NCBI GenBank assembly: GCA_002269645.1
Contig: NIVC01000175.1
Location: 62,001-126,000 of the forward strand
Length of the DNA: 64,000 bases
Source of the DNA: Macrostomum lignano
Lineage: Eukaryota
Direction: 5' to 3'
Shown here one piece after another: positions 21,321 through 54,318 of the stretch (position 1 is its first letter; each line of letters begins with the position of its first letter). The notes under the pieces are model-generated. The model saw nothing but the letters and a program-made list of their open reading frames with translations, was not told the origin of the DNA and made no database searches. The position numbers were made by a program, and so were the translations under genes.

Positions 21321-24296
21321 TTAACGCAGTGAATTTTCGGAGAGCCACTGGACAAGCGGCAGCAAACTTCTCTCCATCCACCCGATATTGATGCGCACGC
21401 TCTCAATTGCGCGGTCCATAGCTACAGAAGCCGCTCCCAAAGTATCCTTGTGCTGCAACTTGAACGCTTCCATTTCTTGCAACTTTTGCTCTGAGTTAAA
21501 TTCAGCAAGATTGTTAATAATATACGTGGCGGTAAAGACACCAACCCCTTTGTCTACTATCGTATTCCAGTTGCGCTTCAGGTAGTCCCACATTATTTGA
21601 ATACCGTTCGGATTAGCAGCAACACTTGAAAATACAGTCGATAGGTCCTGTCCTCTGATTTTGGTCTCGTCCAGGGCGTAGTCCAGGTACCGGTTGAGAA
21701 TCCACGGCTCGCTGGTGCACGCCAGACTGCGGATGATGTCGTTCTGAGTTCCCGGGTGAGCCACGGTCTTGCTGAACTCGAATAGACGGTCCCACACAGC
21801 AACAAATGAAGTGGCCACTCCTTCGCACAGGACCCTCCGTCGGATGTCGGGCGTGATTGTCGATGTGAAAGACGAGTTTACGAACTCTTCGAACTTGTTT
21901 GTTGCAGCCGTTTCACAGCTTCTCAGACGGTACAAACAGGCCGACGACACGATGAGGCCTCGCTTCAGCTTAGTCAAGTGGGTGTCCGTGTCCTTGTTGT
22001 CAAGTCCGACATCGTTGAAGGCTCCCTCGAGTAGGTTTCGCATGTACGCACTCAGCGGTCCGTACTCGGGAGACTGTCGGTGGAGCATTGAGTGCAGGTA
22101 GCCGATCTTTGACAGAGCAGACGACCACGGAACATAGTGCGTCTCATTCTTCAAGTACTTGGTCATGTTGAGCGGAATGCTGTAGTCCAGATAGCCGGCA
22201 CTGGCCAGAGCAAAGCTGTCATCGAGCAGACGAGCCCTGTCCTGCGGACTGAACACCGTGTGATTCGAAATCAGCTGATCGATGAGTCGCTTCCAGTTGT
22301 CCAAGTCGTAGTTCACTCTGTAGAAGCCGGACGAGCGAAGGTTGAGCAGATACCAGTCGTCAGCCGTGTTGTTGAATTCGAAGGACTGCTCCTTCTCGGC
22401 CATCCAGTTCACAAAGCCCGACACGTCCTCAGGAGTTCCCGAGGTGAGGTTCTGCTTGGTTCCCATGGTGACAGGAATGATCCACGTGTAGTTGTAGTCG
22501 CTCGGGTAGCTCGGAACTTGACTGGGGTCACTGAGAAAGTGATTCTGCGTCAGAGTGAGACGTCGAGCCGCAGTCGAGACGGAACAGTTGAGCACGGGGT
22601 AGCCCATCTGCTTGATCCAGCGATCCATCACTGAGCTGACGTTGAGAGACTTGTTTGTGGACTCGGAGTACTGCCGGGTCAGACTGTTATAGAGAGCGGT
22701 GTGGAATGTGTTTCCATAGCTGTTCTGACGCAGGTAGTTTCCGACACCCTTGCGGAAGACCTCGTCACCGACAAAGCCGTGAAGCATGCGGAGAACCGAG
22801 GCTCCTTTTCTGTACGTGATTGTGTCGAAGATCGCATTTATCTGATTAGGGGTGTACACTTCAACGTAAATAGGCCGACTGGCCCCTTTCGAATCAACGT
22901 CGAACGCTAATTGTTGCTGCGTCGTCACAAATTGGGCATCCATCTCCCAGTCTGGATGAAGATTATCTACCCCAAGGTTCAAAGTGAAGCTTGCAAATCC
23001 TTCATTGAGCCAAAGATCGTCCCACCATTCTGGAGTCACTAGGTTTCCGAACCACATGTGGACGACCTCATGGCTAACGACGCTGCCAATGGACTGTAGT
23101 ACAGCACTCGTGTCTTTGGTGCTATTGAATACGAGTCGAGCTTCCCGGTAAAGTATAAGACCCCAGTTTTCCATTGCACCTGCATCAAAATCTGGAACAG
23201 CAGATTGATCTATTTTGCTTAGAAGGTGCGTAATATTGAAGTAGGACTCAAAATACAAGGTGAGGTTTTTCACCGCAACAAGTGAATAGTTAGTCTGCTG
23301 TACAAGCTCCGGGCGGGCCCAGTTGCGATAAGAACGCATCTGGCTGTCTTCATCGGAAATGCTTTCAAACTGAGCAACTAGAAAAGCAGTAAGATACGTC
23401 GACATAATGGGTGTTGTCTCAAAGTCTTCTTTAACAAATTGATGAGACTGATTTGCTGATGTAAACCAGTCATTTGCTGATACAGTCTCATTCTTTTTCG
23501 ATGGCATGTTGGTAAAGGACTTGTAGTCGATACGCCTTACCAGGCTCAAGTCGAATGTCGCTTTCATTCCAGGTTCGTCAAAACACGGAAAAGTCTTTCT
23601 CGCATCTGTAGGTTGCATTTGTGATGCAACTAAATATTTTGTCTCTCCATTTTCCTCATACAGGCTGAAGTAGAGACCAACCAAATCCCTACTCAACGGA
23701 GCCTTAAATCGGGGGATCGCTATCGAGATGTCGCTGCTGTTTGTAGGAAGCGACTCGCTCAGATCGATGCTGTACCACTCGCGATCTTCGTCATACACAC
23801 AGCTGTCGACGGTGTAGTTTTTGTTTGATTTAGAGTTGTAAACCCGAATGTCCGCAGCCGTTAGCGGGATCTTCATCGCATGCAGCTTGATGTTGCTGGT
23901 TGATTCGTTGATGCTGAGCCTCACCTGCATGGAGCCGGTAAAGTAGAACTCCGACGCGTTGTTACCGTAGATGTAGGGCGCCAGAGTGACGGTGTAGTGC
24001 AGCGGCTTTACTCCGGTCGGCAGTCGGACGTCCGTAACGAGCGGCGGCGCCGTCGTAGGTCCAGCAGTCGACGTCAAAGTCGTAGCAGGTGGCGCCGCGG
24101 TCGGAGGAGGGTAAGGGTCGCATTTCGGAGCCGTGAAGTGTACGATGAGGCCCACCGCCACGACGGAGCCTGCAAAGACGAGTGCCAGCGCGACAAGGAT
24201 AGGTACGGTGAGGAAGAGACCTCTCTTGCCAGAGCCTCCATCCCCACGTAAGCTCACGCTGCTGTCGGAGCCTTTGTACATGGCGTAACCACCCAT
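21321..24296 (-). CDS. M1 aminopeptidase N-like, copy 1, type II membrane protein, 991 aa, intronless
   Basis: N-terminal TM anchor, Thr/Pro stalk, GAMEN, HEVVH-x18-E, ITYRKG, ERAP1-like C-terminal domain. Confidence 0.96.
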   Translation of the reverse strand: MGGYAMYKGSDSSVSLRGDGGSGKRGLFLTVPILVALALVFAGSVVAVGLIVHFTAPKCDPYPPPTAAPPATTLTSTAGPTTAPPLVTDVRLPTGVKPLHYTVTLAPYIYGNNASEFYFTGSMQVRLSINESTSNIKLHAMKIPLTAADIRVYNSKSNKNYTVDSCVYDEDREWYSIDLSESLPTNSSDISIAIPRFKAPLSRDLVGLYFSLYEENGETKYLVASQMQPTDARKTFPCFDEPGMKATFDLSLVRRIDYKSFTNMPSKKNETVSANDWFTSANQSHQFVKEDFETTPIMSTYLTAFLVAQFESISDEDSQMRSYRNWARPELVQQTNYSLVAVKNLTLYFESYFNITHLLSKIDQSAVPDFDAGAMENWGLILYREARLVFNSTKDTSAVLQSIGSVVSHEVVHMWFGNLVTPEWWDDLWLNEGFASFTLNLGVDNLHPDWEMDAQFVTTQQQLAFDVDSKGASRPIYVEVYTPNQINAIFDTITYRKGASVLRMLHGFVGDEVFRKGVGNYLRQNSYGNTFHTALYNSLTRQYSESTNKSLNVSSVMDRWIKQMGYPVLNCSVSTAARRLTLTQNHFLSDPSQVPSYPSDYNYTWIIPVTMGTKQNLTSGTPEDVSGFVNWMAEKEQSFEFNNTADDWYLLNLRSSGFYRVNYDLDNWKRLIDQLISNHTVFSPQDRARLLDDSFALASAGYLDYSIPLNMTKYLKNETHYVPWSSALSKIGYLHSMLHRQSPEYGPLSAYMRNLLEGAFNDVGLDNKDTDTHLTKLKRGLIVSSACLYRLRSCETAATNKFEEFVNSSFTSTITPDIRRRVLCEGVATSFVAVWDRLFEFSKTVAHPGTQNDIIRSLACTSEPWILNRYLDYALDETKIRGQDLSTVFSSVAANPNGIQIMWDYLKRNWNTIVDKGVGVFTATYIINNLAEFNSEQKLQEMEAFKLQHKDTLGAASVAMDRAIESVRINIGWMERSLLPLVQWLSENSLR

Positions 24297-25063
24297 GGCA
24301 CTTGGAGTTTTCTTTTAGGCTCTTGCTGGCTGTATGTAAATCTTAATGCAAATTTTCTGCTATGAGCCTGAAACTGTGCTTAAGCAAAAATTCGTGTTTG
24401 ATAGGAGCGTATTTTTATTTTAAATACAGATTCTCGGATGCGATATCGAGCACGATAAGGATAAATGTCTTTTTCGTTTAGTTGAATAGTTTAAGAGCTT
24501 TCTATTTTAGTCTAGAGCAAAGTTTAATTTTTATCTATGCAGGCAGGCGCTGTTATCTTGTTTTTTTCCATAATTAGTTAACAAATTTATGGTATAAGTA
24601 GAATTCAGCAGTTAAATTTACTGACTTTTCCAGTGAAATTTGACTTTCACAGACTGCTTAACCGTAAGATAAGACCAAGAGCATAATTTCTGTTGACCAT
24701 ACTCGTATTGTTTGAAAAATCTTTTAGCAGAAACTCGCTAATTGACGTTTTGAATTGATTCCAATACGGTATGTACAGTAGTTTTATCAGTGCTAGAGAT
24801 CTGTGTGAACCGCCAAAGCAACTGAAAGCTTGAGCGAGGTCAGATAAGAAAATCATATTAGCTATGTTTGTCTACGGTCCAGGTAGCTTTTTTTTAATTT
24901 GTGAAGCTCTCTGCTTCATTGCTTTCCTATTTTGTTAAGATAAACTTGTGAGCAACCCAATTATTTGGAGTAATATTTTTCGTCGAATAAAGTAAATGAT
25001 GAGGACGCATCTTTTTTCAATCTTAAAACCGCACATTTTGCTTCGATGCGCTCTTTCCCCTAC

Positions 25064-28103: not shown

Positions 28104-31084
28104 TTACAGTATGTATCTACCATTTTCAGTCAGCCAGGACCTTACCACAGGCAAATTGATCTTCATCCATCTGATTTTGATGCGCACGCTCTCAAGAGCT
28201 AAATTGAAAGCTCTAGCGACACTGCCCAATGACTCCTTGTGCTGCACTTTCAATTTCTCAATTTCTTTAAACTTTTGTTCAGAGTTAAAAGCAGCTAAAT
28301 TTTGAACAATGTATGGTAACGTGAAAGAACCAACACTTTTGTTCAATATCGTATTCCAGTTGCGCTGCAGGTAGTCCCACATTATTTGAAGACCGTTTGG
28401 ATTCGACGCAACACTAGAAAATACAGTCGATAGGTCCTGTCCTCTGATTTTCGACTCGTCCAGGGCGTAGTCCAGGTACCGGTTGAGAATCCACGGCTCG
28501 CTGGTGCACGCCAGACTTCGGATGATGTCGTTCTGAGTTCCCGGGTGAGCCACGGTCTTGCTGTACTCAAACAGACGGTCCCACACAACAACAACTGAAG
28601 TGGCCACTCCTTCGCACAGGACCCTCCGTCGGATGTCGGGCGTGATAGTCGATGTGAAAGACGAGTTTACAAACTTTTCGAACTTGATTGCTGCAGCGGT
28701 TTTACAGCTTCTAAGACCGTACAAACAGGCCGACGACACGATGAGGCCTCGCTTCAGCTTAGTCAAGTGGGTGTCCGTGTCCTTGTTGTCAAGTCCGACA
28801 TCGTTGAATGCTCCCTCGAGTAGGTTTCGCATGTACGCACTCAGCGGTCCGTACTCGGGAGACTGTCGGTGGAGCATTGAGTGCAGGTAGCCGATCTTTG
28901 ACAGAGCAGACGACCACGGAACATAGTGCGTCTCATTCTTCAAGTACTTGGTCATGTTGAGCGGAATGCTGTAGTCCAGATAGCCGGCACTGGCCAGAGC
29001 GAAGCTGTCATCGAGCAGACGAGCCCTGTCCTGCGGACTGAACACCGTGTGATTCGAAATCAGCTGATCGATGAGTCGCTTCCAGTTGTCCAAGTCGTAG
29101 TTCACTCTGTAGAAGCCGGACGAGCGAAGGTTGAGCAGATACCAGTCGTCAGCCGTGTTGTTGAATTCGAAGGACTGCTCCTTCTCGGCCATCCAGTTCA
29201 CAAAGCCCGACACGTCCTCAGGAGTTCCCGAGGTGAGGTTCTGCTTGGTTCCCATGGTGACAGGAATGATCCACGTGTAGTTGTAGTCGCTCGGGTAGCT
29301 CGGAACTTGACTGGGATCGCTCAGAAAGTGATTCTGTGTCAGTGTGAGACGTCGAGCCGCAGTCGAGACGGAACAGTTGAGCACGGGGTAGCCCATCTGC
29401 TTGATCCAGCGATCCATCACTGCGCCGACGTCGAGAGACTTGTTTGTGGACTCGGAGTACTGCCGGGTCAGACTGTCATAGAGAGCGGTGTGGAATGTGT
29501 TTCCGTAGCTGTTCTGGCGCAAGTAGTTTCCGACACCCTTGCAGAAGATCTCGTCACCAACAAAGTCATGAAGCATGCGGAGAATGGTAGCTGCTTTGTA
29601 GTATGTAATGATGTCAAATATTTCGTTTATTTGATCTGGGTTATAGACTCGTACATAAATTGGATGACTTGCTTCTTTTGAATCGACATCAAAAGCGATC
29701 TGTTGTTTTGAAGCAACGAACTGGGCGTCAATTTCCCAGTCTCGGTGTAATTTTTTCACTCCTAATGCCTCAGCAAAGCTTGCAAATCCTTCATTAAGCC
29801 AAAGATCGTCCCACCATGCAGGAGTGACCAAATTTCCAAACCACATATGGGCCATTTCATGAATCGCAACCATTCCAATAAGCTGATACGCATTAGTGGT
29901 GTCTTTTAATGAATTAAAGACAAGGAGTTCTTCGCGATAGATAATGAGCCCCCAGTTTTCCATTGCGCCAGCGTTGAAATCTGGTACTGCAGCCTGGTCC
30001 GTCTTGTTCAGTGGATACGACACATTAAAATACGACTCAAAGTACTCCGTAATGTTTCTTACTACGTCAAGTGAGTAATCGGTCTGGTTCACGAACTTAG
30101 GTCGAGCCCAGTTTCGATATTCTCTCCCCTGAGAGTCCATGGCTTTGATGTGCTCAAACTGAGACACGATGAACGCCAGAAGGTACGTGGACATGATCGG
30201 GGTGGTCTCGAAGTCCTCCTGCACCAGCTGCTCTGAGTCAGTTATCTCACTGAACCATGTCGAAGCACTCACGTTCGTAGTACGAATGGACGGCATGTTG
30301 CTTATCGAAATGTAGTCTGAACGCCTCACAAGACTTACATCGAACGTGGCCTTGAATGCCGGCTCGTCGAAACATGGAAACGTCTTTCTCGCGTCAGTCG
30401 GTTGCAGCTGTGAGGTGGCCAGGTACTTTGTAGCTCCGTTCTCGATGTACGAGCTCAGATACAAACCTCGAAGATCAGATCGAAGCGGAGCTCTGAACCA
30501 GGCAATCTCGATCACGACGTCGGTGCTGTTCGCTGGGAGCGGCACGCTTAGGTCGATGCTGTACCACTCACGATCTTTGTCGTACATACAGCTGTCGACA
30601 GTGTAGTTTTTGTTTGATGTAGAGTTGTAAACCCGAATGTCCGCAGCCGTTAGCGGGATCTTCGTCGCGTGCAACTTGATGTTGCTGGTTGATTCGTTGA
30701 TGCTGAGCCTCACCTTCATGGAGCCGGTAAAGTAGAACTCCGACGCGTTGTTACCGTAGATGTAGGGCGCCAGAGTGACGGTGTAGTGCAGCGGCTTTAC
30801 TCCGGTCGGCAGTCGGACGTCCGTAACGAGCGGCGGCGCCGTCGTAGGTCCAGCAGTCGACGTCAAAGTCGTCGCAGGTGGCGCCGCGGTCGGAGGAGGT
30901 AAGGGTCGCATTTCGGAGCCGTGAAGTGTACGATGAGGCCCACCGCCACAACGGATGCAGAGAAGACGAGCGCGAGTCCGACAATATTAGTCACGGTGAG
31001 AAAGAGTCCTTTTTTAACCGATTCTGTATTTCCATGAATGCCAACACTGCTGTCTGAGTTTTTATAGTCAGCGTATGCATCCAT
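28104..31084 (-). CDS. M1 aminopeptidase N-like, copy 2, type II membrane protein, intronless; 1-nt frameshift at about 30898
   Basis: MDAYADYK...TM segment (ORF 30863-31246 frame) joins ORF 28104-30911 if one G is restored (GGAGGAGGTAAG here vs GGAGGAGGGTAAG in copy 1). GAMEN, HEMAH-x18-E, ITYYK. Confidence 0.92.
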
Positions 31085-31969: not shown

Positions 31970-32081
31970 CCAACCAACCAACCAACCAACCAACCAACCA
32001 ACCAACCAACCAACCAACCAACCAACCAACCAACCAACCAACCAACCAACCAACCAACCAACCAACCAACCAACCAACCAA
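31970..32081. repeat. (CCAA)n microsatellite
   Basis: Perfect CCAA units. Confidence 0.97.
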
Positions 32082-34597: not shown

Positions 34598-36102
34598 ATG
34601 GCCTTCGAGCCGACTATGGATAAACAAGCTATTTCTAGGGACGGGGACCCTTCTAAACCCCAACCTCAGTCCGAAGGACCGGCCGGCCCTGCTGGCAGAT
34701 CCCAACCGACTGATTCAACTGTGGCAAAGAAGGACCGGCTGGCTCTGCTGGCAGATCCGACCAGAGCTACCAAACTCAAAATACCCTAAGACCTGCCAGC
34801 TCCGCTGGTGGATCTAAGGGAACCGCGAGCTCTGAGCCTAAAGGACCGGCCAAATCTGGCAGATCCGATGAAGCTCAGCGGGCTCGGCTTGAGCGCAAAC
34901 GCGCTAAACAACGCGCCAAAAGGCAGGCCAAGAAGGGAGCTGCGGGGGCCAAAGCGGCGGCGTCCACCATGGATGCTGAAGCGACTGGAGTCCCAAGGCA
35001 ACCAGGCGGGCCGGCCGGTGGAAGCTCCAGTAGTTCAGCGGCGGCGCTCCCTGGAGCTGCTGCCGCGGCTGCTGAGGCCGAAACCACGGCGCAACAAATG
35101 GCCACTGCCAACAAGGAGGTTCCTTCGGGAGCTACCTTTGCGGCGAAGGCCAAGGCCAAAATCCCGGGAGTGATCATCCAAGGTCGCGACCAGGACTGGA
35201 CCACTGATCAGCTTCAAAAAGTGTGGAGTGCTGTTGACTCCTATCTGATTGAGCTGACTGTCGAGGAGGGAATCTCCATCGGCGTTGAGCGGATGGTGCT
35301 GCGAAGCACATTCGTTCTTATTGCTCCTAGCAGCGAGGAGGACGCTCGGCGGCTGCTCCAGCGGCTACCGACGGTCTCCTTGGATGCTGACCTTGGTGGA
35401 GCTCTTTTTCTTCGCGAGGGCCAGCGTCCAAAGACGATACCCTATGTGGTTTTCGTCCCTGCTAAGAGCACCGCAGCTGGACCAGACGTTATTCGCCGGG
35501 TCCTACTGCGTCTGAACCCCGACCTCCCTGCTAGTGGACTGGTGTATCACCGCAAAGTCCGCAGGGGGGAGACGGGCAACTCAATTGTCCTCGGCCTTTC
35601 CAGCACTTGGGCGAGTCGGTACCCTAATGGATCCTCTTTCCAGCTGGGTGCCCTCAAGCTCAAGTTGCGCCGAGGAAAGTCTGCCAAAGGGAAGGCTACT
35701 GCCAACCCCGGCATCTCCGGCAAGAGCGGGGCGCAGTCTAAGGCCCAAGGAAAGGCGCAAGCCGATCCCAAAGCCAAAGCTGCATCTCGCCCCTCTGCTA
35801 GCAGCAGTTCGGCGACCGCGGTAACGGCTCCGGCCGAGCCCCGGGAACCAAACCTGCCAGTCGGAGAAGGAGTTGAGGACGAGGCCGGGTCTTCGGAATC
35901 CGAGCTCTCCTCGGCCACCTTGGTGGGGTCTGAAGGTAAAGATGCAGGTGAGGAAGCTTCCTCCATCCTGTCATCGGAGCCTGAGGACTCTGCTGGGGGG
36001 GCCGGTGGGGGTGAGGAGGCCATGGACGTCGACCAACTCCCATCTCCCAGTCAAGCCCCAGCGGCCTGGGACGAGGACGATCTGTTGTCCAAGTCTCCTT
36101 GA
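34598..36102 (+). CDS. LINE ORF1 (DUF4780-like core); 1-nt frameshift at about 34727
   Basis: The frame of ORF 34969-36102 is open back to 34714. The repeated peptide EGPAGPAGRS / EGPAGSAGRS / KGPAKSGRS continues across the shift from ATG 34598. Core VVFVP...LLRLNPDLP resembles LOA ORF1 (recalled). Confidence 0.75.
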
Positions 36103-36141
36103 TGGCCCTGGGCTCTAGCCAGATATTGCATTTAATACAGT

Positions 36142-43368: not shown

Positions 43369-46341
43369 TTAAGCGCTCTGAACATTCTCGCTGAGCCAGG
43401 CTCTCAAAGACGGCAAGTTGCTTTCCATCCACTTGATGTTGATGCGAACACTCTCCAGAGCCAGATCCATGGCGCGTGTTGCAGCTCCGAGACTGTTTTC
43501 TTCTTTAAATCTTTCCATTTCAGCCAGTTTCTGGGCGTTGTTAAAGTCAGCCAGGTTGTTAATAAAGTAAGAAATCGTGAAGGCTCCAGGAACAACTTCC
43601 TGAATTTGATTCCAGTTTCTCTGCAAAAAATCCCAAACGATTTGCAGGCCATTTGGATTGGCTGCAACACTTGAAAACACAGTCGATACGTCCTGCCTTC
43701 GAATTTTGGACTCGTCCAGAGCGTAGTCCAGGTACCGGTTAAGAATCCATGGCTCGCTGGTGCACGCCAGACTGCGGATGATGTCGTTCTGAGTTCCCGG
43801 GTGAGCCACGGTCTTGCTGAACTCGAATAGACGGTCCCACACAGCAACAAATGAAGTGGCCACTCCTTCGCACAGGACCCTCCGTCGGATGTCGGGCGTG
43901 ATAGTCGATGTGAAAGACGAGTTTACGAACTCTTCGAACTTGTTTGTTGCAGCCGTTTCACAGCTTCTCAGACGGTACAAACACGCTGACGACACGATGA
44001 GGCCTCGCTTCAGCTTAGTCAAGTGGGTGTCCGTGTCCTTGTTGTCAAGTCCGACATCGTTGAATGCTCCCTCGAGTAGGTTTCGCATGTACGCACTCAG
44101 CGGTCCGTACTCGGGAGACTGTCGGTGGAGCATTGAGTGCAGGTAGCCGATCTTTGACAGAGCAGACGACCACGGAACATAGTGCGTCTCATTCTTCAAG
44201 TACCTGGTCATGTTGAGTGGAATGCTGTAGTCCAGATAGCCGGCACTGGCCAGAGCGAAGCTGTCATCGAGCAGACGAGCCCTGTCCTGCGGACTGAACA
44301 CCGTGTGATCCGAGACCAGCTGATCGATGAGTCGCTTCCAGTTGTCCAAGTCGTAGTTTACTCTGTAGAAGCCGGACGAGCGAAGGTTGAGCAGATACCA
44401 GTCGTCAGCCGTGTTGTTGAATTCGAAGGACTGCTCCTTCTCGGCCATCCAGTTTACGAAGCCCGACACGTCCTCAGGAGTTCCCGAGGTGAGGTTCTGC
44501 TTGGTTCCCATGGTGACAGGGATGATCCACGTGTAGTTGTAGTCGCTCGGGTAGCTCGGAACCTGACTGGGGTCGCTCAGAAAGTGATTCTGTGTCAGTG
44601 TGAGACGTCGAGCCGCAGTCGAAACGGAACAGTTTAGCACGGGGTAGCCCATCTGCTTGATCCAGCGATCCATCACTGAGCCGACGTCGAGAGACTTATT
44701 TGTGGACTCGGAGTACTGCCGGGTCAGACTGTCATAGAGAGCGGTGTGGAATGTGTTTCCGTAGCTGTTCTGACGCAGGTAGTTTCCGACACCCTTGCGG
44801 AAGACCTCGTCACCGACAAAGCCGTGAAGCATGCGAAGAACGGTGGCTCCTTTTCTGTACGTGATCGTGTCGAAGATTTCGTTTATCTGGCTGGGATTGT
44901 ACACTTGAAGATAAATTGGGTGGCTGGCACCTTTTGAGTCAACATCAAATGCCGTTCTCTGTTGAGTCGGCACAAACTGAGCGTCAATTTCCCAATCTGG
45001 ATGGTAGTCATTTACTCCGATGTTCTGAACGAAGCTTGCGAATCCTTCGTTCAACCAAATATCGTCCCACCATTCAGGAGTGACCAAATTTCCAAACCAC
45101 ATATGAGCAAGCTCATGGCTTACAACGCTTCCTATCGACTGTTTAATCGCGCTTGTGTCTCTTGTATCGTTAAATACAAGTCGACCCTCACGATAGATAA
45201 TGAGCCCCCAGTTTTCCATTGCGCCAGCGTTGAAATCTGGTACTGCAGCCTGGTCCGTCTTGTTCAGTGGATACGACACATTAAAGTACCACTCAAAGTA
45301 CTCCGTAATGTTCCTTACTACGTCAAGTGAGTAATCGGTCTGGTTCACGAACTCAGGTCGAGCCCAGTTTCGATATTCTCTCCCCTGAGAGTCCATAGCT
45401 TGGATGCGCTCAAACTGAGACACGATAAACGCCAGAAGGTACGTGGACATGATCGGAGTGGTCTCGAAGTCCTCCTTCACCAGCTGCTCTGAGTCAGTCA
45501 TCTCGCTGAACCATGTCGAAGCACTCACGTTCGTAGTACGAATGGACGGCATGTTGCTTATTGAAATGTAGTCTGAACGCCTCACAAGACTCACATCGAA
45601 CGTGGCCTTGAATGCCGGCTCGTCGAAACATGGAAACGTCTTTCTCGCGTCAGTCGGTTGCAGATGTGAGGTGGCCAGGTACTTTGTAGCTCCGTTCTCG
45701 GGGTACGAGCTCAGATACAAACCTCGAAGATCAGATTGAAGCGGAGCTCTGAACCAGGCAATCTCGATCACGACGTCGGTGCTGTTCGCTGAGAGCGGCA
45801 CGCTTAGATCGATGCTGTACCACTCACGATCTTCGTCGTACATACAGCTGTCGACAGTGTAGTTTTTGTTTGATGTAGAGTTGTAAACCCGAATGTCCGC
45901 AGCCGTTAGCAAGATCTTCGTCGCGTGCAACTTGATGTTGCTGGTTGATTCGTTGATGCTGAGCCTCACCTTCATGGAGCCGGTAAAGTAGAACTCCGAC
46001 GCGTTGGTTCCGTAAATATAGGGCGCCAGAGTGACATTGTAGTGCAGCGGTTTTACTCCAGTCGGCAGTCGGACGTCTGTGACGAGCGGCGGCGCCGTCG
46101 TAGGTCCGGCAGTCGTCGTCAAAGTCGTCGCAGGTGGCGCGGCGGTCGAAGGAGGGTAAGGGTCGCATTTCGGAGCCGTGAAGTGTACGATGAGGCCTAC
46201 CGCTACGACGGAGCCTGCAAAGACGAGTGCCAGCGCGACAAGGATAGGTACGGTGAGGAAGAGGCCTCTCTTGCTAGAGCCACCGTCCCCACGTAAGCTC
46301 ACGCTGCTGTCGGAGCCTTTGTACATGGCGTAGCCGCCCAT
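43369..46341 (-). CDS. M1 aminopeptidase N-like, copy 3, type II membrane protein, 990 aa, intronless
   Basis: TM anchor, GAMEN, HELAH-x18-E, ITYRKG; uninterrupted ORF. Confidence 0.96.
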   Translation of the reverse strand: MGGYAMYKGSDSSVSLRGDGGSSKRGLFLTVPILVALALVFAGSVVAVGLIVHFTAPKCDPYPPSTAAPPATTLTTTAGPTTAPPLVTDVRLPTGVKPLHYNVTLAPYIYGTNASEFYFTGSMKVRLSINESTSNIKLHATKILLTAADIRVYNSTSNKNYTVDSCMYDEDREWYSIDLSVPLSANSTDVVIEIAWFRAPLQSDLRGLYLSSYPENGATKYLATSHLQPTDARKTFPCFDEPAFKATFDVSLVRRSDYISISNMPSIRTTNVSASTWFSEMTDSEQLVKEDFETTPIMSTYLLAFIVSQFERIQAMDSQGREYRNWARPEFVNQTDYSLDVVRNITEYFEWYFNVSYPLNKTDQAAVPDFNAGAMENWGLIIYREGRLVFNDTRDTSAIKQSIGSVVSHELAHMWFGNLVTPEWWDDIWLNEGFASFVQNIGVNDYHPDWEIDAQFVPTQQRTAFDVDSKGASHPIYLQVYNPSQINEIFDTITYRKGATVLRMLHGFVGDEVFRKGVGNYLRQNSYGNTFHTALYDSLTRQYSESTNKSLDVGSVMDRWIKQMGYPVLNCSVSTAARRLTLTQNHFLSDPSQVPSYPSDYNYTWIIPVTMGTKQNLTSGTPEDVSGFVNWMAEKEQSFEFNNTADDWYLLNLRSSGFYRVNYDLDNWKRLIDQLVSDHTVFSPQDRARLLDDSFALASAGYLDYSIPLNMTRYLKNETHYVPWSSALSKIGYLHSMLHRQSPEYGPLSAYMRNLLEGAFNDVGLDNKDTDTHLTKLKRGLIVSSACLYRLRSCETAATNKFEEFVNSSFTSTITPDIRRRVLCEGVATSFVAVWDRLFEFSKTVAHPGTQNDIIRSLACTSEPWILNRYLDYALDESKIRRQDVSTVFSSVAANPNGLQIVWDFLQRNWNQIQEVVPGAFTISYFINNLADFNNAQKLAEMERFKEENSLGAATRAMDLALESVRINIKWMESNLPSLRAWLSENVQSA

Positions 46342-47418: not shown

Positions 47419-49184
47419 GTGCATTCAAAAAGTTCTTAGACATCCCTCATATCTCTGCATCTGTTTGACCGATTTTGATGAGAATTTATACAAACATGGG
47501 TCTATATTTTGATGAATTCAGTGCTAGAGTTTCAGCTTGGTCGTATAGACAGAACGAAAGCAATCGATCATTTACTGACGAACCTACGAAATTAGCAATA
47601 CGATTTTGAACAGCATCGGATCTGGACCTCACTCTAAACTGGCCCGGGGGGTTGTGAAATCGCAGCTTGTTTTTAGAGGAATAAAAGCTTTCGGTGAGTA
47701 TTGATTAATCATTACTTTCAAGCTGCGAGGGTTTAGCCATAGACAAAAAAGATAGAACAAAGCAGTAGGCAGCATTAGACTGAGTGCGCAGAATGAACGT
47801 CAGATTGAAATGCTGAGATGCAGAACCAACCTCAGATGGTTTAAGAATGGCTAGTGCATATCGCGATAAAGTTTCGCAGCGCCTGATCGTTTTTGCTTTT
47901 GCGGACGAAGGCATGTCCGTGAACACTATCCACCAGAGATTAGTCAGCCGTTTTGGAGATGATGCCTGCTGTCGAGCAACCGTCGCGAACTGGGTCCGGA
48001 AGAGAAAGGACGGCGAAATGAGCGTGCAGGACAAGCCACGCTCAGGCCGACCAGCTACTGCAGTCAACGACAGCAGTGCCATCCTGATCGAAGAGCTGGT
48101 AAGTGAAAACGGCCACATCACTATTGACGAGTTGGCCAATGCCGCCGGGATTTCGTGTGGCTCGGTCTTCCAAATTCTGCACGAGCATCTTGGTCTGTCA
48201 AAGCTGGTCTCTCGATGGGTGCCAAGACTGCTAACTGCCGAGCAGAAAAATCGCCGATACGAAGTCTGCTTGCAACAAAGGGCGGCAATTTCAGCTCTGG
48301 GAGACGAGTTCAAAAGCAGATTTGTAACTCAAGATGAGTCCATGTTTGCCCTGTACGACCCACTCTCCCGGCGGGAGTCGAGGGCCTGGCTTCCGAGGGG
48401 CGGCGGCGGCGGTGACGTCGAAAGCGCAGGCACCTATCCCAAGAAGATCATGTTAAGTGTTTTTTGGGATGCGAGCGGGCCCCTCATGTTCACGTGGTAC
48501 GGCCAGGGCCAGACACAGAACAGCGAGCGGTTTTGTGACGAGCTCACGAGGCTGAGACAGGAGCTACTGCAACGGCGTCGGATCGTGCGCGAGGGCGTCC
48601 TGCTGCACTGCGACAATGCCCGGCCGCACTCGGCAGCCCTCACTCGCTCTCACATCGACAGCCTCAGATTCCAGCAGTGGCAGCATCCGCCCTACTCGCC
48701 TGATTTGGCACCGTCTGACTATGGTCTTTTTGGACACGTCAAGGCGCAGCTGAGAGGCAAGAGGTTCGCTAGCTTCCCCGAGCTGCAAACGGCTGTTGAG
48801 GGGCTCATCAGAGCGACTCCTAGAGACACGTGGTTAGGATGGATCGAAGAGCTGCCGATGCGGTATGACAAGTGCATTCAACGGAACGGTGATTACTTCG
48901 AAGATTTTCATGATTGGTGATCTGATTTTTGAAGTTTGGGAACTTGCCAACTTGAACCGTTTGCCCCTTTTGCTTGTACGTTTTGTTATGTGCTTAAAAT
49001 CGTATTGCTAATTTCGTAGGTTCGTCAGTAAATGATCGATTGCTTTCGTTCTGTCTATACGACCAAGCTGAAACTCTAGCACTGAATTCATCAAAATATA
49101 GACCCATGTTTGTATAAATTATCATCAAAATCGGTCGAACAGATGCAGAGATATGAGGGGTGTCTAAGAACTTTTTGAATGCAC
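47419..49184 (+). mobile_element. Mariner (DD34D) transposon, complete, with 189-bp TIRs and TA TSD
   Basis: TIRs 47419-47607 and 48996-49184 with about 3 mismatches; TA at 47417-47418 and 49185-49186. Confidence 0.95.
47847..48920 (+). CDS. Mariner transposase, 357 aa, intact
   Basis: HTH region, SGRP, WVPRLL (WVPHEL-like), TQDES, HCDNARPH, YSPDLAPSD; 34 residues between the second and third catalytic Asp. Confidence 0.97.
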   Translation: MASAYRDKVSQRLIVFAFADEGMSVNTIHQRLVSRFGDDACCRATVANWVRKRKDGEMSVQDKPRSGRPATAVNDSSAILIEELVSENGHITIDELANAAGISCGSVFQILHEHLGLSKLVSRWVPRLLTAEQKNRRYEVCLQQRAAISALGDEFKSRFVTQDESMFALYDPLSRRESRAWLPRGGGGGDVESAGTYPKKIMLSVFWDASGPLMFTWYGQGQTQNSERFCDELTRLRQELLQRRRIVREGVLLHCDNARPHSAALTRSHIDSLRFQQWQHPPYSPDLAPSDYGLFGHVKAQLRGKRFASFPELQTAVEGLIRATPRDTWLGWIEELPMRYDKCIQRNGDYFEDFHDW

Positions 49185-50029: not shown

Positions 50030-50360
50030 ATAATGTTTTTAGCACTGGGAACTGAGAAATTTCCATCCTGATGTCGATTCTGTTTCCTGAAAGCGGCTCG
50101 CTCCAATTGATACTGTATAATTGACGACATTTGTCGTACATTCAGGTGACACAGACGGCATAATTCTTGTCTAAGCAGCTGTCATAGATTTGGAAGTCCG
50201 TAGAGGTGATATTGACCGCATTGGCCGAGTGTAGCTAGTCTTCGATGCTTATTCTCGCCTTCATCAAGACGTTAAAGTAGATCTCCGAGGTGTGGTGTCG
50301 TAGATGTACGGCACCGGCTTCTTTATGCTCGGCAGTCCGACGTGCGGTGGCGCTATCGTC
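50030..50360 (-). pseudogene. Decayed fragment of a fifth aminopeptidase N-like copy (N-terminal domain)
   Basis: Plus-strand GTTAAAGTAGATCTCCGAGG...CGTAGATGTACGGCACC and CGGCAGTCCGACGT align to copy 1 (about 23938-24031). Translation MYDKCRQLYSINWSEPLSGNRIDIRMEISQF vs copy 4 MYDEERQWYSIDLSEPLTANSTDVVIGIAQF. Contains stops and indels. Confidence 0.8.
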
Positions 50361-51595
50361 GGTGACTCAACGGGCACGAGATTCATGGGTGAAGACACAG
50401 AAAAATTATCAGGAAGCGAGTGGTTAGCATATTCTGACTGTTGTACTTTGCCTGCAAAACTTCTGCAACTTTGGTAAACACTTCAAATTCTGTGTGTAAA
50501 TTGCTTTGCTGAATAGGCTTCGCTTCACTCACTTCCATCTTTGTCTAATTAAGTTTGTTATATTTTGTGTAGCAACTGCGATCATTACAACTAGTGAGAT
50601 TTTGCAGCTTTGGGTTTTACATTTGATCACAATTTTGCATTACAAAACAGGAGTATTCATATTTTTCATTGATATAATTACCTTTCTGGGTTTTCAGTGA
50701 TTTTTCAGATATACTGCAGTCACCGTACACGAACGCGCGTTACATCAATTGCTTACATTTAGTGCCTGCAGACATGCGTCACTGACCTTTTAAAAGCATG
50801 AGTCACTGCAGGCATGTGTCAAACATAGACTAAGAGTTTATATTCACCATAGACTGAGAACTGAAATCACTAGGAAATTAAGTTTTTTCCACTATTAATT
50901 TGGTTTATTTCACGAATATCGAACTCCAAACGTACTAGTATGCATTCACTAATCCCCTCTCTGTCCACAAGACTGATTTCGAAGGATTGAAGGACAATTC
51001 TCTGTTTCCAAGACCGCTAAAAATTCGCCCACTGGTATTCCGCCGTTCAAATTCAAATTGAATTGAAATCACATAAACGGTTCAACATCTAATAAGAATG
51101 TACGAAAAGTGACAAATGTCACTGTCAAAACTAAACTAAGTGCCTAAAGTTAAGCGAACAAAGCAACGTTACGAATTAAGCGACACATCGAATATTTCCT
51201 ACTGCCACTGGTACATTAAACGCAATTACATAATAAAAACAATGAGACTCCTTTTCCATGGTGCAGAAAATATTGACGCAAATCAATGAAATTATAACAC
51301 TGGCTATAATGACGTAAGCAGGGACCTGCGCTGGAAAGTCACCTGGCGGAATATAATTCTCCTTTAATTAATTCGTGAAGCACTTTCACGCTTGCACGAG
51401 GACCTGTAAAATAAACACAAACAACTTTAGTATATAACTAGAGCGTTATGGACATTCAAACAGTATATTTAGAAAGCAGTAGAAAGAAACCAAGCTCTTT
51501 AAGTGACTGAGAAGCAGACTTTCCAGAGACATTCGCAATAAGTTAAAGTTGCTGCGTCTCAAATCGAAAGTCCGAACCACAGATCGAAGTCCAAA

Positions 51596-54318
51596 ATGCA
51601 CTTTAGAGCAGTAAGAAGCCTTCTAACGGCTATTGTCGTGCTGCTTTTTTTAAAAAGAAGAGCCAGCGCCTACCTAGCTCCTATTACATTTACTGGAAAC
51701 CTGCCGACGCCGACGCCGCTCGTTACGGATGTCCGACTGCCGACTGGAGTAAAGCCGCTGCACTACAATGTCACTCTGGCTCCTTACATCTACGGCACCA
51801 ACGTGTCGGAGTTCTACTTTACCGGCTCCATGCAGGTGAGGCTGAGCATCAACGAATCAACCAGCAACATCAAGCTGCACTCCGATAGGATTCCACTTAC
51901 GGCTGCAGACATTCGGGTTTTTGACAGCAAATCAAACAAGAACTACACCATCACCAGATGTATGTACGACGAAGAGCGTCAATGGTACAGCATCGATTTA
52001 AGCGAGCCGCTTACAGCGAACAGCACTGACGTCGTAATTGGAATTGCCCAGTTCAAAGCTCCTCTTCAATCTGATCTTCGAGGCTTGTACGTGAGCTCGT
52101 ACATCGAGAATGGAACTAAAAAATACCTGGCCACCTCACAGCTGCAGCCGACTGACGCGAGAAAGACGTTTCCATGTTTCGACGAGCCGGCGTTCAAGGC
52201 CACGTTCGACATCAGCATTGTAAGAAAAAAGAGCTTAAAATCCATTAGCAACATGCCATCGAAGCGAGTTACCAAGGTCAGCGCCAGTGATTGGTTCAAA
52301 GAGATGAGCGACTCAAATCAGGTAGAGAAGGAGGACTTTGAGACCACTCCTATCATGTCGACGTACATTCTGGCATTCATTGTGTCTCAGTTCGATTACA
52401 TTGAAGACACGGATGCTCAGATGCGCAAGTACCGCACTTGGATGAGACCTGAACTTCTTAGTCTGTCTGAATTCTCCTTGGTCGCGCAGAAGAATTTCAC
52501 GCAATTTTACGAGGCCTACTTCGGTGTTCCTTTTCCACTAAAGAAGCTGGACCAAGCTGCTGTTCCCGACTTCAACGCAGGTGCCATGGAGAACTGGGGA
52601 CTCATTATCTATCGCGAAAGTCTTTTAGCATTTGACAGCCGAAAAGATAGGAGCTCAGTTTACCAGCGCATCGGAAGTGTTATGAGCCACGAGTTTGCTC
52701 ATATGTGGTTTAGAAATCTTGTAACTCCTGAATGGTGGGACGATCTTTGGCTCAATGAAGGGTTCGCAAGTTTTGTTGAAAACATTGGACTGAACAATCT
52801 TCGCCCTGATTGGAACATGGATTCACAATTTGTCGCGACAAAGCAAATGGCCGCATTAGAAGTCGATTCGATGGGAACCAGCCACCCAATTTACGTCGAA
52901 GTACACAATCCAAATCAAATTAGTGAAATCTTCGACACGATCACGTACAGAAAAGGAGCCACCGTTCTTCGCATGCTTCATGGCTTTGTCGGTGACGAGG
53001 TCTTCCGCAAGGGTGTCGGAAACTACCTGCGTCAGAACAGCTATGGAAACACATTCCACACCGCTCTCTATGACAGTCTGACCCGGCAGTACTCCGAGTC
53101 CACCAACAAGTCTCTCGACGTCGGCTCAGTGATGGATCGCTGGATCAAGCAGATGGGCTACCCCGTGCTCAACTGTTCCGTCTCGACTGCGGCTCGACGT
53201 CTCACACTGACACAGAATCACTTTCTGAGCGACCCCAGTCAGGTTCCGAGCTACCCGAGCGACTACAACTACACGTGGATCATCCCTGTCACCATGGGAA
53301 CCAAGCAGAACCTCACCTCGGGAACTCCTGAGGACGTGTCGGGCTTTGTGAACTGGATGGCCGAGAAGGAGCAGTCCTTCGAATTCAGTCCGCAGGACAG
53401 GGCTCGTCTGCTCGATGACAGCTTCGCTCTGGCCAGTGCCGGCTATCTGGACTACAGCATTCCGCTCAACATGACCAGGTACTTGAAGAGCGAGACGCAC
53501 TATGTTCCGTGGTCGTCTGCTCTGTCAAAGATCGGCTACCTGCACTCAATGCTCCACCGACAGTCTCCCGAGTACGGTCCGCTGAGTGCGTACATGCGAG
53601 ACCTACTCGAGGGAGCCTTCAACGATGTCGACTTGACAACAAGGACACGGACACCCACTTGACTAAGCTGAATCAAGAGATTATTGTATGGTCAGCCTGT
53701 TTGTATAGATTGCCACGTTGCAAAAATGCTGCTAAAGAAAAGTTTAGAGGGTTTGTGGGCTTGAATGACATTGCGTTTATTCATCCTGAGATCAGGCGAA
53801 GAGTTTTTTGTGAAGGAGTTTCAACGCTTTTGCTAAAGGAGTGGGACGATTTTTTCGATTTCACTAAAACCGTGTCTCACCCAGGTACTCAAAATGACAT
53901 GTTCCGTGGTCTCGCTTGCTCAAATGACCCATGGATTCTCAATCGGTACCTTAAATTTGCAATGAACGAAAGCAAAGTGCGCAAGCAGGATATGGCTTAT
54001 GTGTTTGCTAGCGTAGCGGCAAATCCTAAAGGTCTTGAAATTGTTTGGAACTATTTGCGGACCAATTGGAATACAGTGAAAAAGAAATTTCCCGGAGCTT
54101 TCACCACTTCATATTTTATAGAAATTCTTGGCGATTTCAACAGCGAACAGAAGTACGCTGAGTTGGTGGAATTCAAAGAGCGTCACAGAGGCAATTTTGG
54201 GTCGGCTAGCCGCGCAATGGACCAGACGCTGGAGAAAGTGCGCGTCAACATTGACTGGATGAAAACGAAACTGCCCCGCGTAAGAACTTGGCTCATTGAG
54301 AATGGGCAAGCTATATAA
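51596..54318 (+). CDS. M1 aminopeptidase N-like, copy 4, inverted, signal-peptide form; 123-bp in-frame deletion at about 53388 and 1-nt frameshift at about 53632
   Basis: MHFRAVRSLLTAIVVLLFLKRRASA leader, GAMEN, HEFAH-x18-E, ITYRKG. ORF 51596-53662 joins ORF 53509-54318 if one G is restored (GTCGACTTG vs GTCGGACTTG in the other copies). Possible pseudogene. Confidence 0.88.

What the first reader, a model, noticed from the sequence alone, without database searches (positions are those of the whole stretch)
21321..54318. Aminopeptidase N cluster is a block-wise mosaic: scaffold homogenised, active-site segment diversified
Seen: the block from MLHGFVGDE to DTHLTKL is almost nucleotide-identical in all four copies, including the inverted copy 4, and extends to RNWN in copies 1-3. 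The segment from after GAMEN...YRE through HExxH to ITY differs in every copy (HEVVH, HEMAH, HELAH, HEFAH), as do the last about 70 aa. Copies 1 and 3 share the N-terminus, while copies 2 and 3 share VPL.ANSTDVV...GAMEN, so relatedness switches along the gene. Established: this segment carries the zinc ligands and lines the M1 substrate pocket. Inference: segmental gene conversion with protected specificity regions, producing a repertoire of peptidases or receptor variants.
Basis: partly seen in the sequence, partly recalled or inferred. Interest (0 to 1): 0.72.

Follow-up and report, generated by a model that had tools for sequence, protein, structure and literature searches.

The report
Patchwork aminopeptidase N genes in flatworm
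Four neighbouring aminopeptidase N genes of the flatworm Macrostomum lignano have repeatedly overwritten parts of one another by gene conversion, but not the stretch that forms the catalytic pocket or the tail; this is a clean example of a well-known process, not a new kind of system.

Summary
The window is Macrostomum lignano (assembly Mlig_3_7). It holds four intronless M1 aminopeptidase N genes whose similarity switches block by block. An 822-nt middle block is 97-98% identical in all six pairs, including the inverted copy. The catalytic-core block (after GAMEN..YRE to ITY) is 67-74% identical and the tail 54-64%. Flanks are unrelated.

Synonymous divergence is saturated in the variable blocks and 0.07-0.10 in the shared block. 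Block trees disagree.

A second, collinear cluster on another contig has the same four types and the same boundaries. In the shared block, variants are shared among paralogues of one cluster (25 sites against 6 type-specific). In the catalytic block they are type-specific (108 against 1). So conversion continued after the clusters split.

The catalytic block has dN/dS of about 0.1 and is the most conserved block family-wide. The shared block is not a conserved scaffold.

The four types do differ at three of ten S1' pocket positions that are near-invariant elsewhere. Selection against conversion there is plausible but unproven.

Verdict: a new member of a known kind (partial concerted evolution). 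Moderate-low interest.

The parts
21321..24296 (-). Copy 1 (type 1, HEVVH): intact 991-aa M1 aminopeptidase N gene, intronless, with an N-terminal membrane anchor
   Evidence: ORF. Pfam Peptidase_M1_N + Peptidase_M1 + ERAP1_C. 100% identical to PAA88783.1, BOX15_Mlig006779g1.
28104..31084 (-). Copy 2 (type 2, HEMAH): 935-aa ORF (28104-30911) plus an upstream anchor-coding start at 31084. A 1-nt deletion in a CCC run near 30898 separates the two.
   Evidence: The sister copy X2b in L002 is continuous. The frameshift may be a long-read assembly error.
43369..46341 (-). Copy 3 (type 3, canonical HELAH): intact 990-aa gene
   Evidence: Full-length match to solved vertebrate APN structures, E = 3e-200.
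51596..54318 (+). Copy 4 (type 4, HEFAH), inverted and head-to-head with copy 3. It has its own hydrophobic N-terminus. It has a 123-nt in-frame deletion at 53384-53386 (TTCA microhomology) and a 1-nt deletion (GG>G) near 53632 that splits the ORF.
   Evidence: The sister copy X4 (P0004) has neither lesion.
21957..22796 (-). Block E in copy 1 (c1 nt 1501-2340): the segment homogenised in all copies. It covers the end of the catalytic domain, domain III and the first third of domain IV.
   Evidence: 97-98% nt identity in all pairs. dS 0.07-0.10. GC3 0.75.
28746..29585 (-). Block E in copy 2
44002..44841 (-). Block E in copy 3
52964..53679 (+). Block E in copy 4 (shorter because of the 123-nt deletion)
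22797..23171 (-). Block D in copy 1 (c1 nt 1126-1500): conversion-free catalytic core. GAMEN 23166-23180; HEVVH-x18-E 23001-23072; catalytic Tyr in ITY 22812-22820.
   Evidence: dS saturated, dN 0.11-0.22 between types. Motif coordinates.
29586..29960 (-). Block D in copy 2 (HEMAH-x18-E 29790-29861)
44842..45216 (-). Block D in copy 3 (HELAH-x18-E 45046-45117)
52589..52963 (+). Block D in copy 4 (HEFAH-x18-E 52688-52759)
21321..21626 (-). Block G in copy 1: type-specific C-terminal ~100 aa (end of domain IV). Equivalent blocks: 28107-28415 (c2), 43369-43671 (c3), 54010-54318 (c4).
   Evidence: 54-64% nt identity. 152 type-specific against 0 cluster-specific sites.
29961..30695 (-). Block C in copy 2: the c2-c3 shared tract (c3 equivalent 45217-45951). 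Part of it (c1 nt ~300-700) was converted after the clusters split.
   Evidence: c2-c3 96.8% against 61-63% for c1. W2-W3 97-99% where X2b-X3 is 81-88%.
21627..21956 (-). Block F in copy 1: shared by copies 1-3 only (equivalents 28416-28745 and 43672-44001). Copy 4 (53680-54009) is divergent here.

Best explanation
The region is a tandem cluster of four old, intronless paralogues of a membrane-type M1 zinc aminopeptidase (aminopeptidase N) in Macrostomum lignano.

The four types arose long ago: synonymous sites are saturated and the flanks are unalignable. Since then, non-reciprocal interlocus gene conversion has repeatedly copied stretches of a few hundred to about a thousand bases between copies, including the inverted one.

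- One middle block (about 840 nt) was homogenised in all copies. It kept exchanging variants after the genome's subgenome copies separated.
- Other tracts join only some copies: the N-terminus in 1-3, the next part in 1-2, the N-domain and front of the catalytic domain in 2-3, and a C-terminal part in 1-2-3.
- Two islands have never been homogenised among the types: the catalytic core from just after GAMEN to the catalytic Tyr, and the last ~100 residues.

The islands evolve under purifying selection within each type. The types differ at pocket-lining positions. The most likely reason for the islands is therefore that convertants which overwrite a type's pocket or cap are removed by selection. 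Accumulated mismatch then reinforces the barrier.

Unequal crossing-over in the homogenised parts also changes copy number.

Shown: the mosaic, its conversion origin, its persistence after the cluster split, and purifying selection. Inferred: that selection rather than a passive mismatch barrier keeps the islands, and that the four enzymes differ in P1' preference.
For: Identity of the locus: best hits are M. lignano proteins from GCA_002269645.1. All copies have Pfam M1_N + M1 + ERAP1_C. Full-length matches to solved APNs reach E = 3e-200.

Mosaic.

dS and dN:
- Block D between types: dS 1.5 to unbounded, dN 0.11-0.22.
- Block E between types: dS 0.07-0.10, dN 0.01-0.02.
- Outside relative O5 (P0005) against all copies in E: dN 0.26-0.28. 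In D it is closest to type 3 (dN 0.063 against 0.096-0.176). In G it is also closest to type 3 (0.18 against 0.34-0.375).

Block trees: in D and G the copies pair up as sister-cluster orthologues and O5 sits beside type 3. In E all M. lignano copies collapse into one clade with O5 outside.

Second collinear cluster (L002, contig NIVC01000100.1): it has the same types and the same block borders.

Site patterns: E has 25 sites cluster-specific and shared by paralogues, against 6 type-specific. D has 1 against 108. G has 0 against 152. Fisher p = 6e-21.

Derived alleles shared within a cluster occur all along E, from nt 1518 to 2277, in both clusters.

A post-split tract in W2 replaced sequence that is 81-88% identical in the sister cluster.

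The inverted copy 4 carries E between the divergent D and F blocks.

Pocket (with PMC7225938 Table 2): the positions equivalent to human APN R381, T384 and E418 read S,S,L (type 1), L,M,E (type 2), S,S,Q (type 3) and R,S,E (type 4). They are fixed within each type across the clusters. The family has R in 77/90 and E in 88/90 at two of them.

HExxH census of distant relatives: HELAH 101/128, HEFAH 3, HEMAH 1, HEVVH 1.

Unequal crossover: X2a is type 2 up to nt ~2475, then type 3, with type-3 3' flank and a repeated ~7.7-kb spacer.

Independent gene models from the older ML2 assembly reproduce c1 across its block junctions and the c2-c1 order (P0121). P0003 matches X3 100% over its C-terminal 506 aa and 97.5% over its N-terminal part.
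Against: Selection against conversion in D and G is not demonstrated.
A passive mismatch barrier could exclude conversion without selection.
- Most block borders are shared by both clusters. They reflect few, partly pre-split events, so the number of independent trials is small.
- The D/E border is staggered over about 100 nt by type (about 1461, 1476-1506 and 1501-1570), not one sharp wall.

GC-biased conversion is not supported by recent variants. Alleles that spread within a cluster are 3 W>S against 17 S>W, like singletons at 5 against 21.

The species of O5 (Logan run SRR30276804) is unknown. It could be an unannotated distant paralogue rather than an orthologue.

No raw reads were available, so assembly quality at the junctions rests on indirect arguments.

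Expression and enzyme activity were not tested.
Confidence: 0.75

Rival explanations
1. Neutral patchwork. Conversion is real, but the two unconverted islands persist only because they happened to escape early. They are now too divergent for heteroduplex formation. No selection on specificity is involved.
For: D is 67-74% and G 54-64% identical between types. That is less than the 81-88% that the one datable post-split tract overcame. Most borders predate the cluster split, so few independent events are sampled. With four types there is no power to detect site-wise selection.
Against: D is the most protein-constrained block. It therefore keeps more nucleotide similarity than C or G, yet it is the one excluded. 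The fast-evolving E block is the one homogenised. D is flanked on both sides by actively converting sequence, and post-split exchanges reach to within ~20-50 nt of it without entering. Type-specific replacements sit at pocket columns that are near-invariant in the family and are fixed in every cluster.
Confidence: 0.3
2. Assembly or polishing artefact. The near-identical blocks arise from collapse or cross-polishing of paralogues in a repeat-rich, triplicated genome.
For: Mlig_3_7 is a long-read draft of a neopolyploid in which 93% of read pairs map to several places and copy-number errors are documented (PMC10733133). All four 1-nt frameshifts seen in the copies are deletions in homopolymer runs, typical of uncorrected long-read errors.
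Against: Cross-polishing cannot turn ~70% identity into 97-98% over 840 nt, because such reads would not cross-map. The shared block is not identical: it has 65 variable sites among eight copies, with cluster-structured patterns. The same architecture appears on a second contig, and in part on a third, with their own substitutions. Gene models from the older ML2 assembly show it too. Each 3-kb gene sits between unique flanks that long reads can span.
Confidence: 0.04
3. Chimeric genes made by unequal crossing-over and recent duplication, not by non-reciprocal conversion.
For: One copy in the sister cluster (X2a) is exactly such a product. It has a type-2 5' part, a type-3 3' part and 3' flank, and a repeated ~7.7-kb spacer.
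Against: In the window, block E is an internal patch flanked on both sides by divergent sequence in every copy. It is present in the inverted copy 4. Flanks of all window copies are unrelated. A single crossover cannot give that. Crossovers between inverted copies would invert the spacer, yet both clusters are collinear.
Confidence: 0.05
4. The shared block is identical because of very strong constraint on its nucleotide sequence (an embedded RNA or regulatory element, or extreme protein constraint), not because of exchange.
For: Long antisense ORFs and GC3 of 0.74 in the block.
Against: The closest outside relative differs from all copies in this block by dN 0.26-0.28 with saturated dS. The block is among the least conserved in 90 distant APNs. 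Variants are shared within clusters, which is the signature of exchange. Antisense ORFs are expected wherever sense codons are GC3-rich.
Confidence: 0.02

Closest known systems
Partial concerted evolution of tandem paralogues with conversion-resistant functional segments. Example: ATP1A1 paralogues of Leptodactylus frogs (bioRxiv 10.1101/2020.08.04.234435, found). Classic cases recalled from my own knowledge: RHD/RHCE, red/green opsins, gamma-globins.
   Same: Tandem duplicates are homogenised by interlocus gene conversion over most of their length. Short segments that carry the functional difference stay divergent. Paralogues within a genome are more alike than orthologues in the converted parts.
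   Different: Here there are four types rather than two, and one copy is inverted. Tracts join different subsets of copies along the gene. Three subgenome copies of the whole cluster give an internal clock. The functional difference is inferred from pocket residues, not measured.
Vertebrate aminopeptidase N / CD13 (solved structures such as 8jkt, 4fyq)
   Same: Full-length similarity (E 1e-180 to 3e-200). Four-domain architecture. GAMEN, HExxH-x18-E and the catalytic Tyr. An N-terminal membrane anchor in types 1-3.
   Different: About 36-38% identity. Intronless. Three of the four types replace near-invariant pocket residues (equivalents of R381 and E418) and the Leu or Ala of HELAH.
Tandem aminopeptidase N arrays of Lepidoptera (midgut enzymes; own knowledge)
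   Same: The same enzyme family expanded as a chromosomal cluster of membrane-bound gut-type enzymes.
   Different: Those genes have introns and are GPI-anchored classes. I found no report of block-wise conversion in them (literature search). No relationship beyond family membership was tested.
Cassette-type diversity generators that use gene conversion (antigenic variation systems, chicken Ig pseudogene conversion; own knowledge)
   Same: Segmental, non-reciprocal copying between clustered homologous sequences.
   Different: In those systems the variable part is what gets converted, from silent donors into one expressed site. Here the variable parts are the ones never converted. All copies are full-length genes and the set of types is old and stable.

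Membership tests
M1 zinc aminopeptidase, aminopeptidase N type (MEROPS M01) | GxMEN exopeptidase motif | tested here: met
   GAMEN is present in all four copies (coordinates). Its G and A columns are 88/90 in distant APNs.
M1 zinc aminopeptidase, aminopeptidase N type (MEROPS M01) | HExxH-x18-E zinc-binding motif | tested here: met
   The motifs HEVVH, HEMAH, HELAH and HEFAH are each followed by x18-E.
M1 zinc aminopeptidase, aminopeptidase N type (MEROPS M01) | Catalytic Tyr (human APN Tyr477 column) | tested here: met
   Tyr at c1 aa 495 in all copies. The column is Tyr in 90/90 relatives.
M1 zinc aminopeptidase, aminopeptidase N type (MEROPS M01) | Domain architecture: N-terminal beta domain, catalytic domain, ERAP1-like C-terminal domain | tested here: met
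   PF17900 + PF01433 + PF11838 well above cut-offs in all copies. End-to-end alignment to solved APNs.
M1 zinc aminopeptidase, aminopeptidase N type (MEROPS M01) | N-terminal signal anchor (type II membrane protein) | tested here: inconclusive
   A hydrophobic stretch (LFLTVPILVALALVFAGSVVAVGLIV) follows a short tail in types 1-3. Type 4 has a different hydrophobic N-terminus. This was judged by eye; no topology predictor was run.
M1 zinc aminopeptidase, aminopeptidase N type (MEROPS M01) | Aminopeptidase activity | not testable with these tools
   Needs expression and assay.
Interlocus gene conversion / partial concerted evolution | Tracts of near-zero synonymous divergence bounded by saturated divergence within the same gene pair | tested here: met
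   dS 0.07-0.10 in E against 1.5 to unbounded in D and G.
Interlocus gene conversion / partial concerted evolution | Incongruent phylogenies along the gene | tested here: met
   Block trees differ. 2:2 informative sites switch from 12|34 to 14|23 along the gene. Run permutation p <= 0.0005.
Interlocus gene conversion / partial concerted evolution | Paralogues of one locus share derived states that are absent from the orthologous locus | tested here: met
   25 such sites in E against 1 in D and 0 in G. Fisher p = 6e-21.
Interlocus gene conversion / partial concerted evolution | Non-reciprocal transfer (donor unchanged) | not testable with these tools
   Needs pedigrees or population data. It is indirectly favoured because the inverted copy carries an internal patch.
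Interlocus gene conversion / partial concerted evolution | GC bias of converted tracts | tested here: inconclusive
   GC3 is 0.73-0.75 in E and 0.63-0.66 in converted F, against 0.35-0.55 in D and 0.42 in unconverted F of c4. Recent spread alleles show no W>S excess.
Diversifying (positive) selection on the variable segment | dN/dS above 1, or at least elevated relative to the rest of the gene | tested here: not met
   Block D: dN/dS 0.08-0.12 between types and 0-0.16 between sister-cluster orthologues of types 1, 3 and 4 (0.39 for type 2). It has the lowest dN of the unconverted blocks. Saturated dS makes the between-type ratio approximate.

The most novel reading that the evidence does not exclude
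Both halves of the pattern are adaptive. The middle block (end of the catalytic domain, domain III and the start of domain IV) is kept identical because the four isoforms must share a surface, for example to form mixed dimers or to bind one common partner. The catalytic pocket and the C-terminal cap are kept distinct. Conversion would then maintain a 'common chassis, four pockets' enzyme set in each of the three subgenomes.
Probability: 0.1. Interest if true: 0.55.

Novelty: new member of a known kind. Interest (0 to 1): 0.33.

Why it matters
This is a very clean, internally replicated case of partial concerted evolution. There are four old enzyme types, conversion tracts that join different subsets of copies, and two cold islands. 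A second, collinear copy of the cluster dates events relative to the subgenome split, and a fragment of a third adds partial support.

If the cold islands are held by selection, the case links three near-invariant S1' pocket positions of M1 aminopeptidases to natural specificity variants that could be tested directly.

There is also a practical warning. Gene trees, orthology calls and short-read mapping for this family in M. lignano will be misleading unless they are done block by block. The existing gene models here are fused or truncated.

It does not reveal a new mechanism.

Tried and rejected
1. Further relatives. A second database search with a profile of the four catalytic-core segments returned only short, distant M1 fragments (<= 55% identity). 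No further Macrostomum relatives were found, so the cross-species replicate rests on one sequence (P0005).

2. Species of the Logan run SRR30276804. It is not in the paper library. O5 is therefore called an 'outside relative', not a proven orthologue.

3. Literature on this cluster, on gene conversion in Macrostomum, and on conversion in APN arrays. Nothing specific was found.

4. GC-biased conversion tested on recent variants. No W>S excess, so I do not claim it.

5. Bootstrap figures printed appear shifted after re-rooting. I use only the topologies and the dN values.

6. Positive selection on the catalytic block: rejected.

7. Pseudogene status of c2 and c4: left open. All 1-nt frameshifts, here and in the sister cluster, are homopolymer deletions.

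8. Retroposition as the source of the intronless copies: considered, but not testable. Similarity ends at the ATG and the stop, so no UTR or poly(A) trace is left.

9. Structure prediction was not run. Full-length matches to solved APNs made it unnecessary, and the tools return no coordinates for distance mapping.
Full report
**What the locus is**

[quoted passage not shown] Copy 1 is 100% identical to PAA88783.1 (BOX15_Mlig006779g1) on an 837-kb contig. Between 21.3 and 54.3 kb lie four uninterrupted reading frames of about 990 codons.
- c1: 21321-24296 (-).
- c2: 28104-30911 (-). Its true start is at 31084, cut off by a 1-nt deletion.
- c3: 43369-46341 (-).
- c4: 51596-54318 (+), inverted and head-to-head with c3.

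All four have Peptidase_M1_N, Peptidase_M1 and ERAP1_C domains. They align end to end with solved vertebrate aminopeptidase N structures (E down to 3e-200). Each carries GAMEN, HExxH-x18-E and the catalytic Tyr.

The spacers hold a LINE-type element (34969-39882) and a mariner-type transposase gene (47847-48920).

A nucleotide alignment of the four copies shows that similarity begins at the ATG and ends at the stop codon. The flanks do not align. Within the genes the pattern is block-wise. Coordinates below are c1 nucleotides; window coordinates are.
- A (1-150): c1 = c3.
- B (151-390): c1 = c2, with c3 close.
- C (391-1125): c2 = c3 (96.8%), while c1 is 61-63% identical to the rest.
- D (1126-1500; after GAMEN..YRE to ITY): every pair is 67-74% identical.
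- E (1501-2340): every pair, including inverted c4, is 97.2-98.0% identical.
- F (2341-2670): c1-c3 are 90-94% identical; c4 is 63-65%.
- G (2671-end): every pair is 54-64% identical.

The longest runs of concordant polymorphic sites exceed all 2000 permutations for four of the six pairs.

**It is exchange, not constraint**

Nei-Gojobori estimates give the following.
- In D, dS between types is 1.5 to unbounded and dN is 0.11-0.22.
- In E, dS is 0.07-0.10 and dN is 0.01-0.02.
- The closest relative outside the cluster, O5 (P0005), is a 988-aa protein on a 3.3-kb Logan contig. In E it differs from all four copies by dN 0.26-0.28 with saturated dS.
- In D, O5 is closest to type 3 (dN 0.063 against 0.096-0.176). 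The same holds in G (0.18 against 0.34-0.375).

Block trees agree with this. In D and G the types are deep lineages and O5 sits beside type 3. In E all M. lignano copies collapse into one tight clade.

Among 90 distant aminopeptidases N, D is the most conserved block (mean top-residue frequency 0.77). E is one of the least conserved (0.54). So identity in E cannot be ascribed to protein constraint.

**An internal replicate**

M. lignano line DV1 carries about three paralogous copies of most of its genome (PMC10733133). The cluster is indeed present again.
- It is on contig NIVC01000100.1 (L002).
- Part of it is at the start of NIVC01000251.1 (L003).

L002 is collinear with the window, with 89-95% identity in spacers. 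It holds the same four types plus one extra copy.

Outside E, each window copy is closest to its counterpart in L002 (94-100%; dS about 0.03-0.09). The block borders are the same in both clusters. The architecture therefore predates the split of the clusters.

Exchange nevertheless went on afterwards.
- In E, 25 variable sites carry a state shared by two to four paralogues of one cluster and absent from the other. Only 6 sites are type-specific.
- In D the counts are 1 and 108. In G they are 0 and 152 (Fisher p = 6e-21).
- Such shared derived alleles are spread from nt 1518 to 2277 in both clusters.
- A further post-split tract is visible in block C. W2 is 97-99% identical to type 3 over nt ~300-700, where the sister copy X2b is only 81-88%.

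**Conversion rather than crossing-over**

Block E is an internal patch with divergent sequence on both sides in every copy, and it is present in the inverted copy. Both clusters are collinear. Single crossovers therefore cannot explain it.

Unequal crossing-over does occur as well. The extra copy X2a in L002 is type 2 up to nt ~2475 and type 3 from there on. It has type-3 3' flank, and the ~7.7-kb spacer is repeated on either side of it.

**What the variable blocks are**

D runs from just after the exopeptidase motif to the catalytic Tyr and holds both zinc-ligand motifs. It is not fast-evolving.
- dN/dS is about 0.1 between types.
- dN/dS is 0-0.16 between sister-cluster orthologues of types 1, 3 and 4, and 0.39 for type 2.
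- Its dN is the lowest of the unconverted blocks.

The types do differ at positions that are otherwise almost fixed in the family.
- The HExxH motif is HELAH in 101 of 128 occurrences among distant relatives. HEFAH, HEMAH and HEVVH occur 3, 1 and 1 times.
- Ten residues are listed as forming the S1' pocket of human aminopeptidase N (PMC7225938, Table 2). Seven are identical in all copies and three differ by type.
- The equivalents of R381, T384 and E418 read S,S,L in type 1; L,M,E in type 2; S,S,Q in type 3; and R,S,E in type 4.
- Each state is fixed in every cluster. The family has R in 77/90 and E in 88/90.

This fits four enzymes with different P1' preference, but it is an inference.

**Why the islands persist**

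Two readings remain: selection, or a passive mismatch barrier.

In favour of selection:
- The excluded block is the one that keeps the most nucleotide similarity among the unconverted parts.
- It is bordered on both sides by converting sequence.
- Post-split exchange comes within 20-50 nt of it.

In favour of a passive barrier:
- D differs by 26-33% between types. That is more than the 12-19% overcome by the datable post-split tract.
- The borders are mostly inherited from before the split, so independent trials are few.
- The D/E border is staggered by type over about 100 nt.

I put selection at roughly 0.55-0.6 and the neutral barrier at about 0.3.

**Assembly questions**

No reads were available. 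Four points argue against an artefact.
- 70% identity cannot be polished into 98%.
- E is not identical, and its variants are structured by cluster.
- The pattern recurs on separate contigs.
- Protein models from the older ML2 assembly reproduce c1 through its junctions and the c2-c1 order. P0003 matches X3 100% over its C-terminal 506 aa and 97.5% over its N-terminal part.

The 1-nt frameshifts are different. All four are deletions in homopolymer runs: c2 CCC>CC, c4 GG>G, X2a GGGGG>GGGG and X4 GG>G. They may be long-read errors, so c2 and c4 should not be called pseudogenes on this evidence.

The 123-nt in-frame deletion in c4 is flanked by TTCA microhomology and is absent from X4.

**Composition**

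GC3 is 0.73-0.75 in E in every copy and 0.63-0.66 in converted F. It is 0.35-0.55 in D, 0.42 in the unconverted F of c4, and 0.39-0.60 in neighbouring genes. That would fit long-term GC-biased conversion. However, recent variants that spread within a cluster show no W>S excess. I leave this open.

**Comparison and verdict**

The pattern is partial concerted evolution with conversion-resistant functional segments. This is known from other tandem paralogues, for example the frog ATP1A1 pair (bioRxiv 10.1101/2020.08.04.234435). I found nothing published on this cluster.

'Diversified active site' and 'homogenised scaffold' are mis-descriptions. 'Protected specificity regions' is plausible but unproven.

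Novelty: a new member of a known kind. Interest: moderate-low.

Noticed in passing
window 50049-50297 (-): A short relic of an aminopeptidase N N-terminal domain, lying between the mariner element and copy 4. tblastn against c1 aa 112-197 gives 39% identity, E = 8e-9.
   Followed up: no
window 34969-39882 (+): A LINE-type retroelement with intact ORFs, between c2 and c3. ORF1 is 377 aa with no Pfam hit. ORF2 is 1246 aa with endonuclease, reverse transcriptase and RNase H. The spacer is about 4.6 kb shorter in the sister cluster, so the insertion looks specific to this subgenome copy.
   Followed up: partly
window 47847-48920 (+): An intact 357-aa mariner/Tc1-type transposase ORF in the head-to-head spacer between c3 and c4.
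   Followed up: no
window 21769-22634, 28558-29681, 43814-44637 (+): Long antisense ORFs (110-251 aa) inside blocks E and F of copies 1-3. They are most likely a by-product of GC3-rich sense codons.
   Followed up: no
L002 20663-23793 and 31477-34620: The sister cluster has an extra copy (X2a). It is identical to X2b for 2475 nt and then type 3, with type-3 3' flank and a repeated ~7.7-kb spacer. This is an unequal-crossover product, so copy number differs between subgenome copies.
   Followed up: yes
L002 36303-36727 compared with window 24297-24996: X1 has about 425 nt of type-3 5' flank directly upstream of its ATG, which c1 lacks. Exchange therefore reached the promoter-proximal region in one cluster.
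   Followed up: partly
window ~30898 and ~53632; L002 copies X2a and X4: All four single-base frameshifts in aminopeptidase copies are deletions within homopolymer runs. This suggests residual long-read errors in the assembly rather than true pseudogenes.
   Followed up: partly
window 1099-1872 and 3924-4853: Long microsatellite or minisatellite arrays that read as (SVSQ)n and (LSNRLTP)n in one frame.
   Followed up: no
window 57234-58646 (-) and 59613-61373 (-): A 470-aa ORF with a borderline Mab-21_C match (24.2 bits, cut-off 24.1) lies next to an ankyrin-repeat gene. A 329-aa, receptor-like multi-pass ORF at 14884-15873 has no Pfam hit but is conserved in the sister cluster.
   Followed up: no
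L004 (Logan SRR30276804 contig, 3283 nt): The outside relative shows the opposite GC3 profile to the M. lignano copies. It is high in D (0.70) and G (0.79) and low in the first half of E (0.47-0.51). If GC3 tracks long-term conversion, its lineage may convert different blocks. This rests on a single sequence.
   Followed up: no
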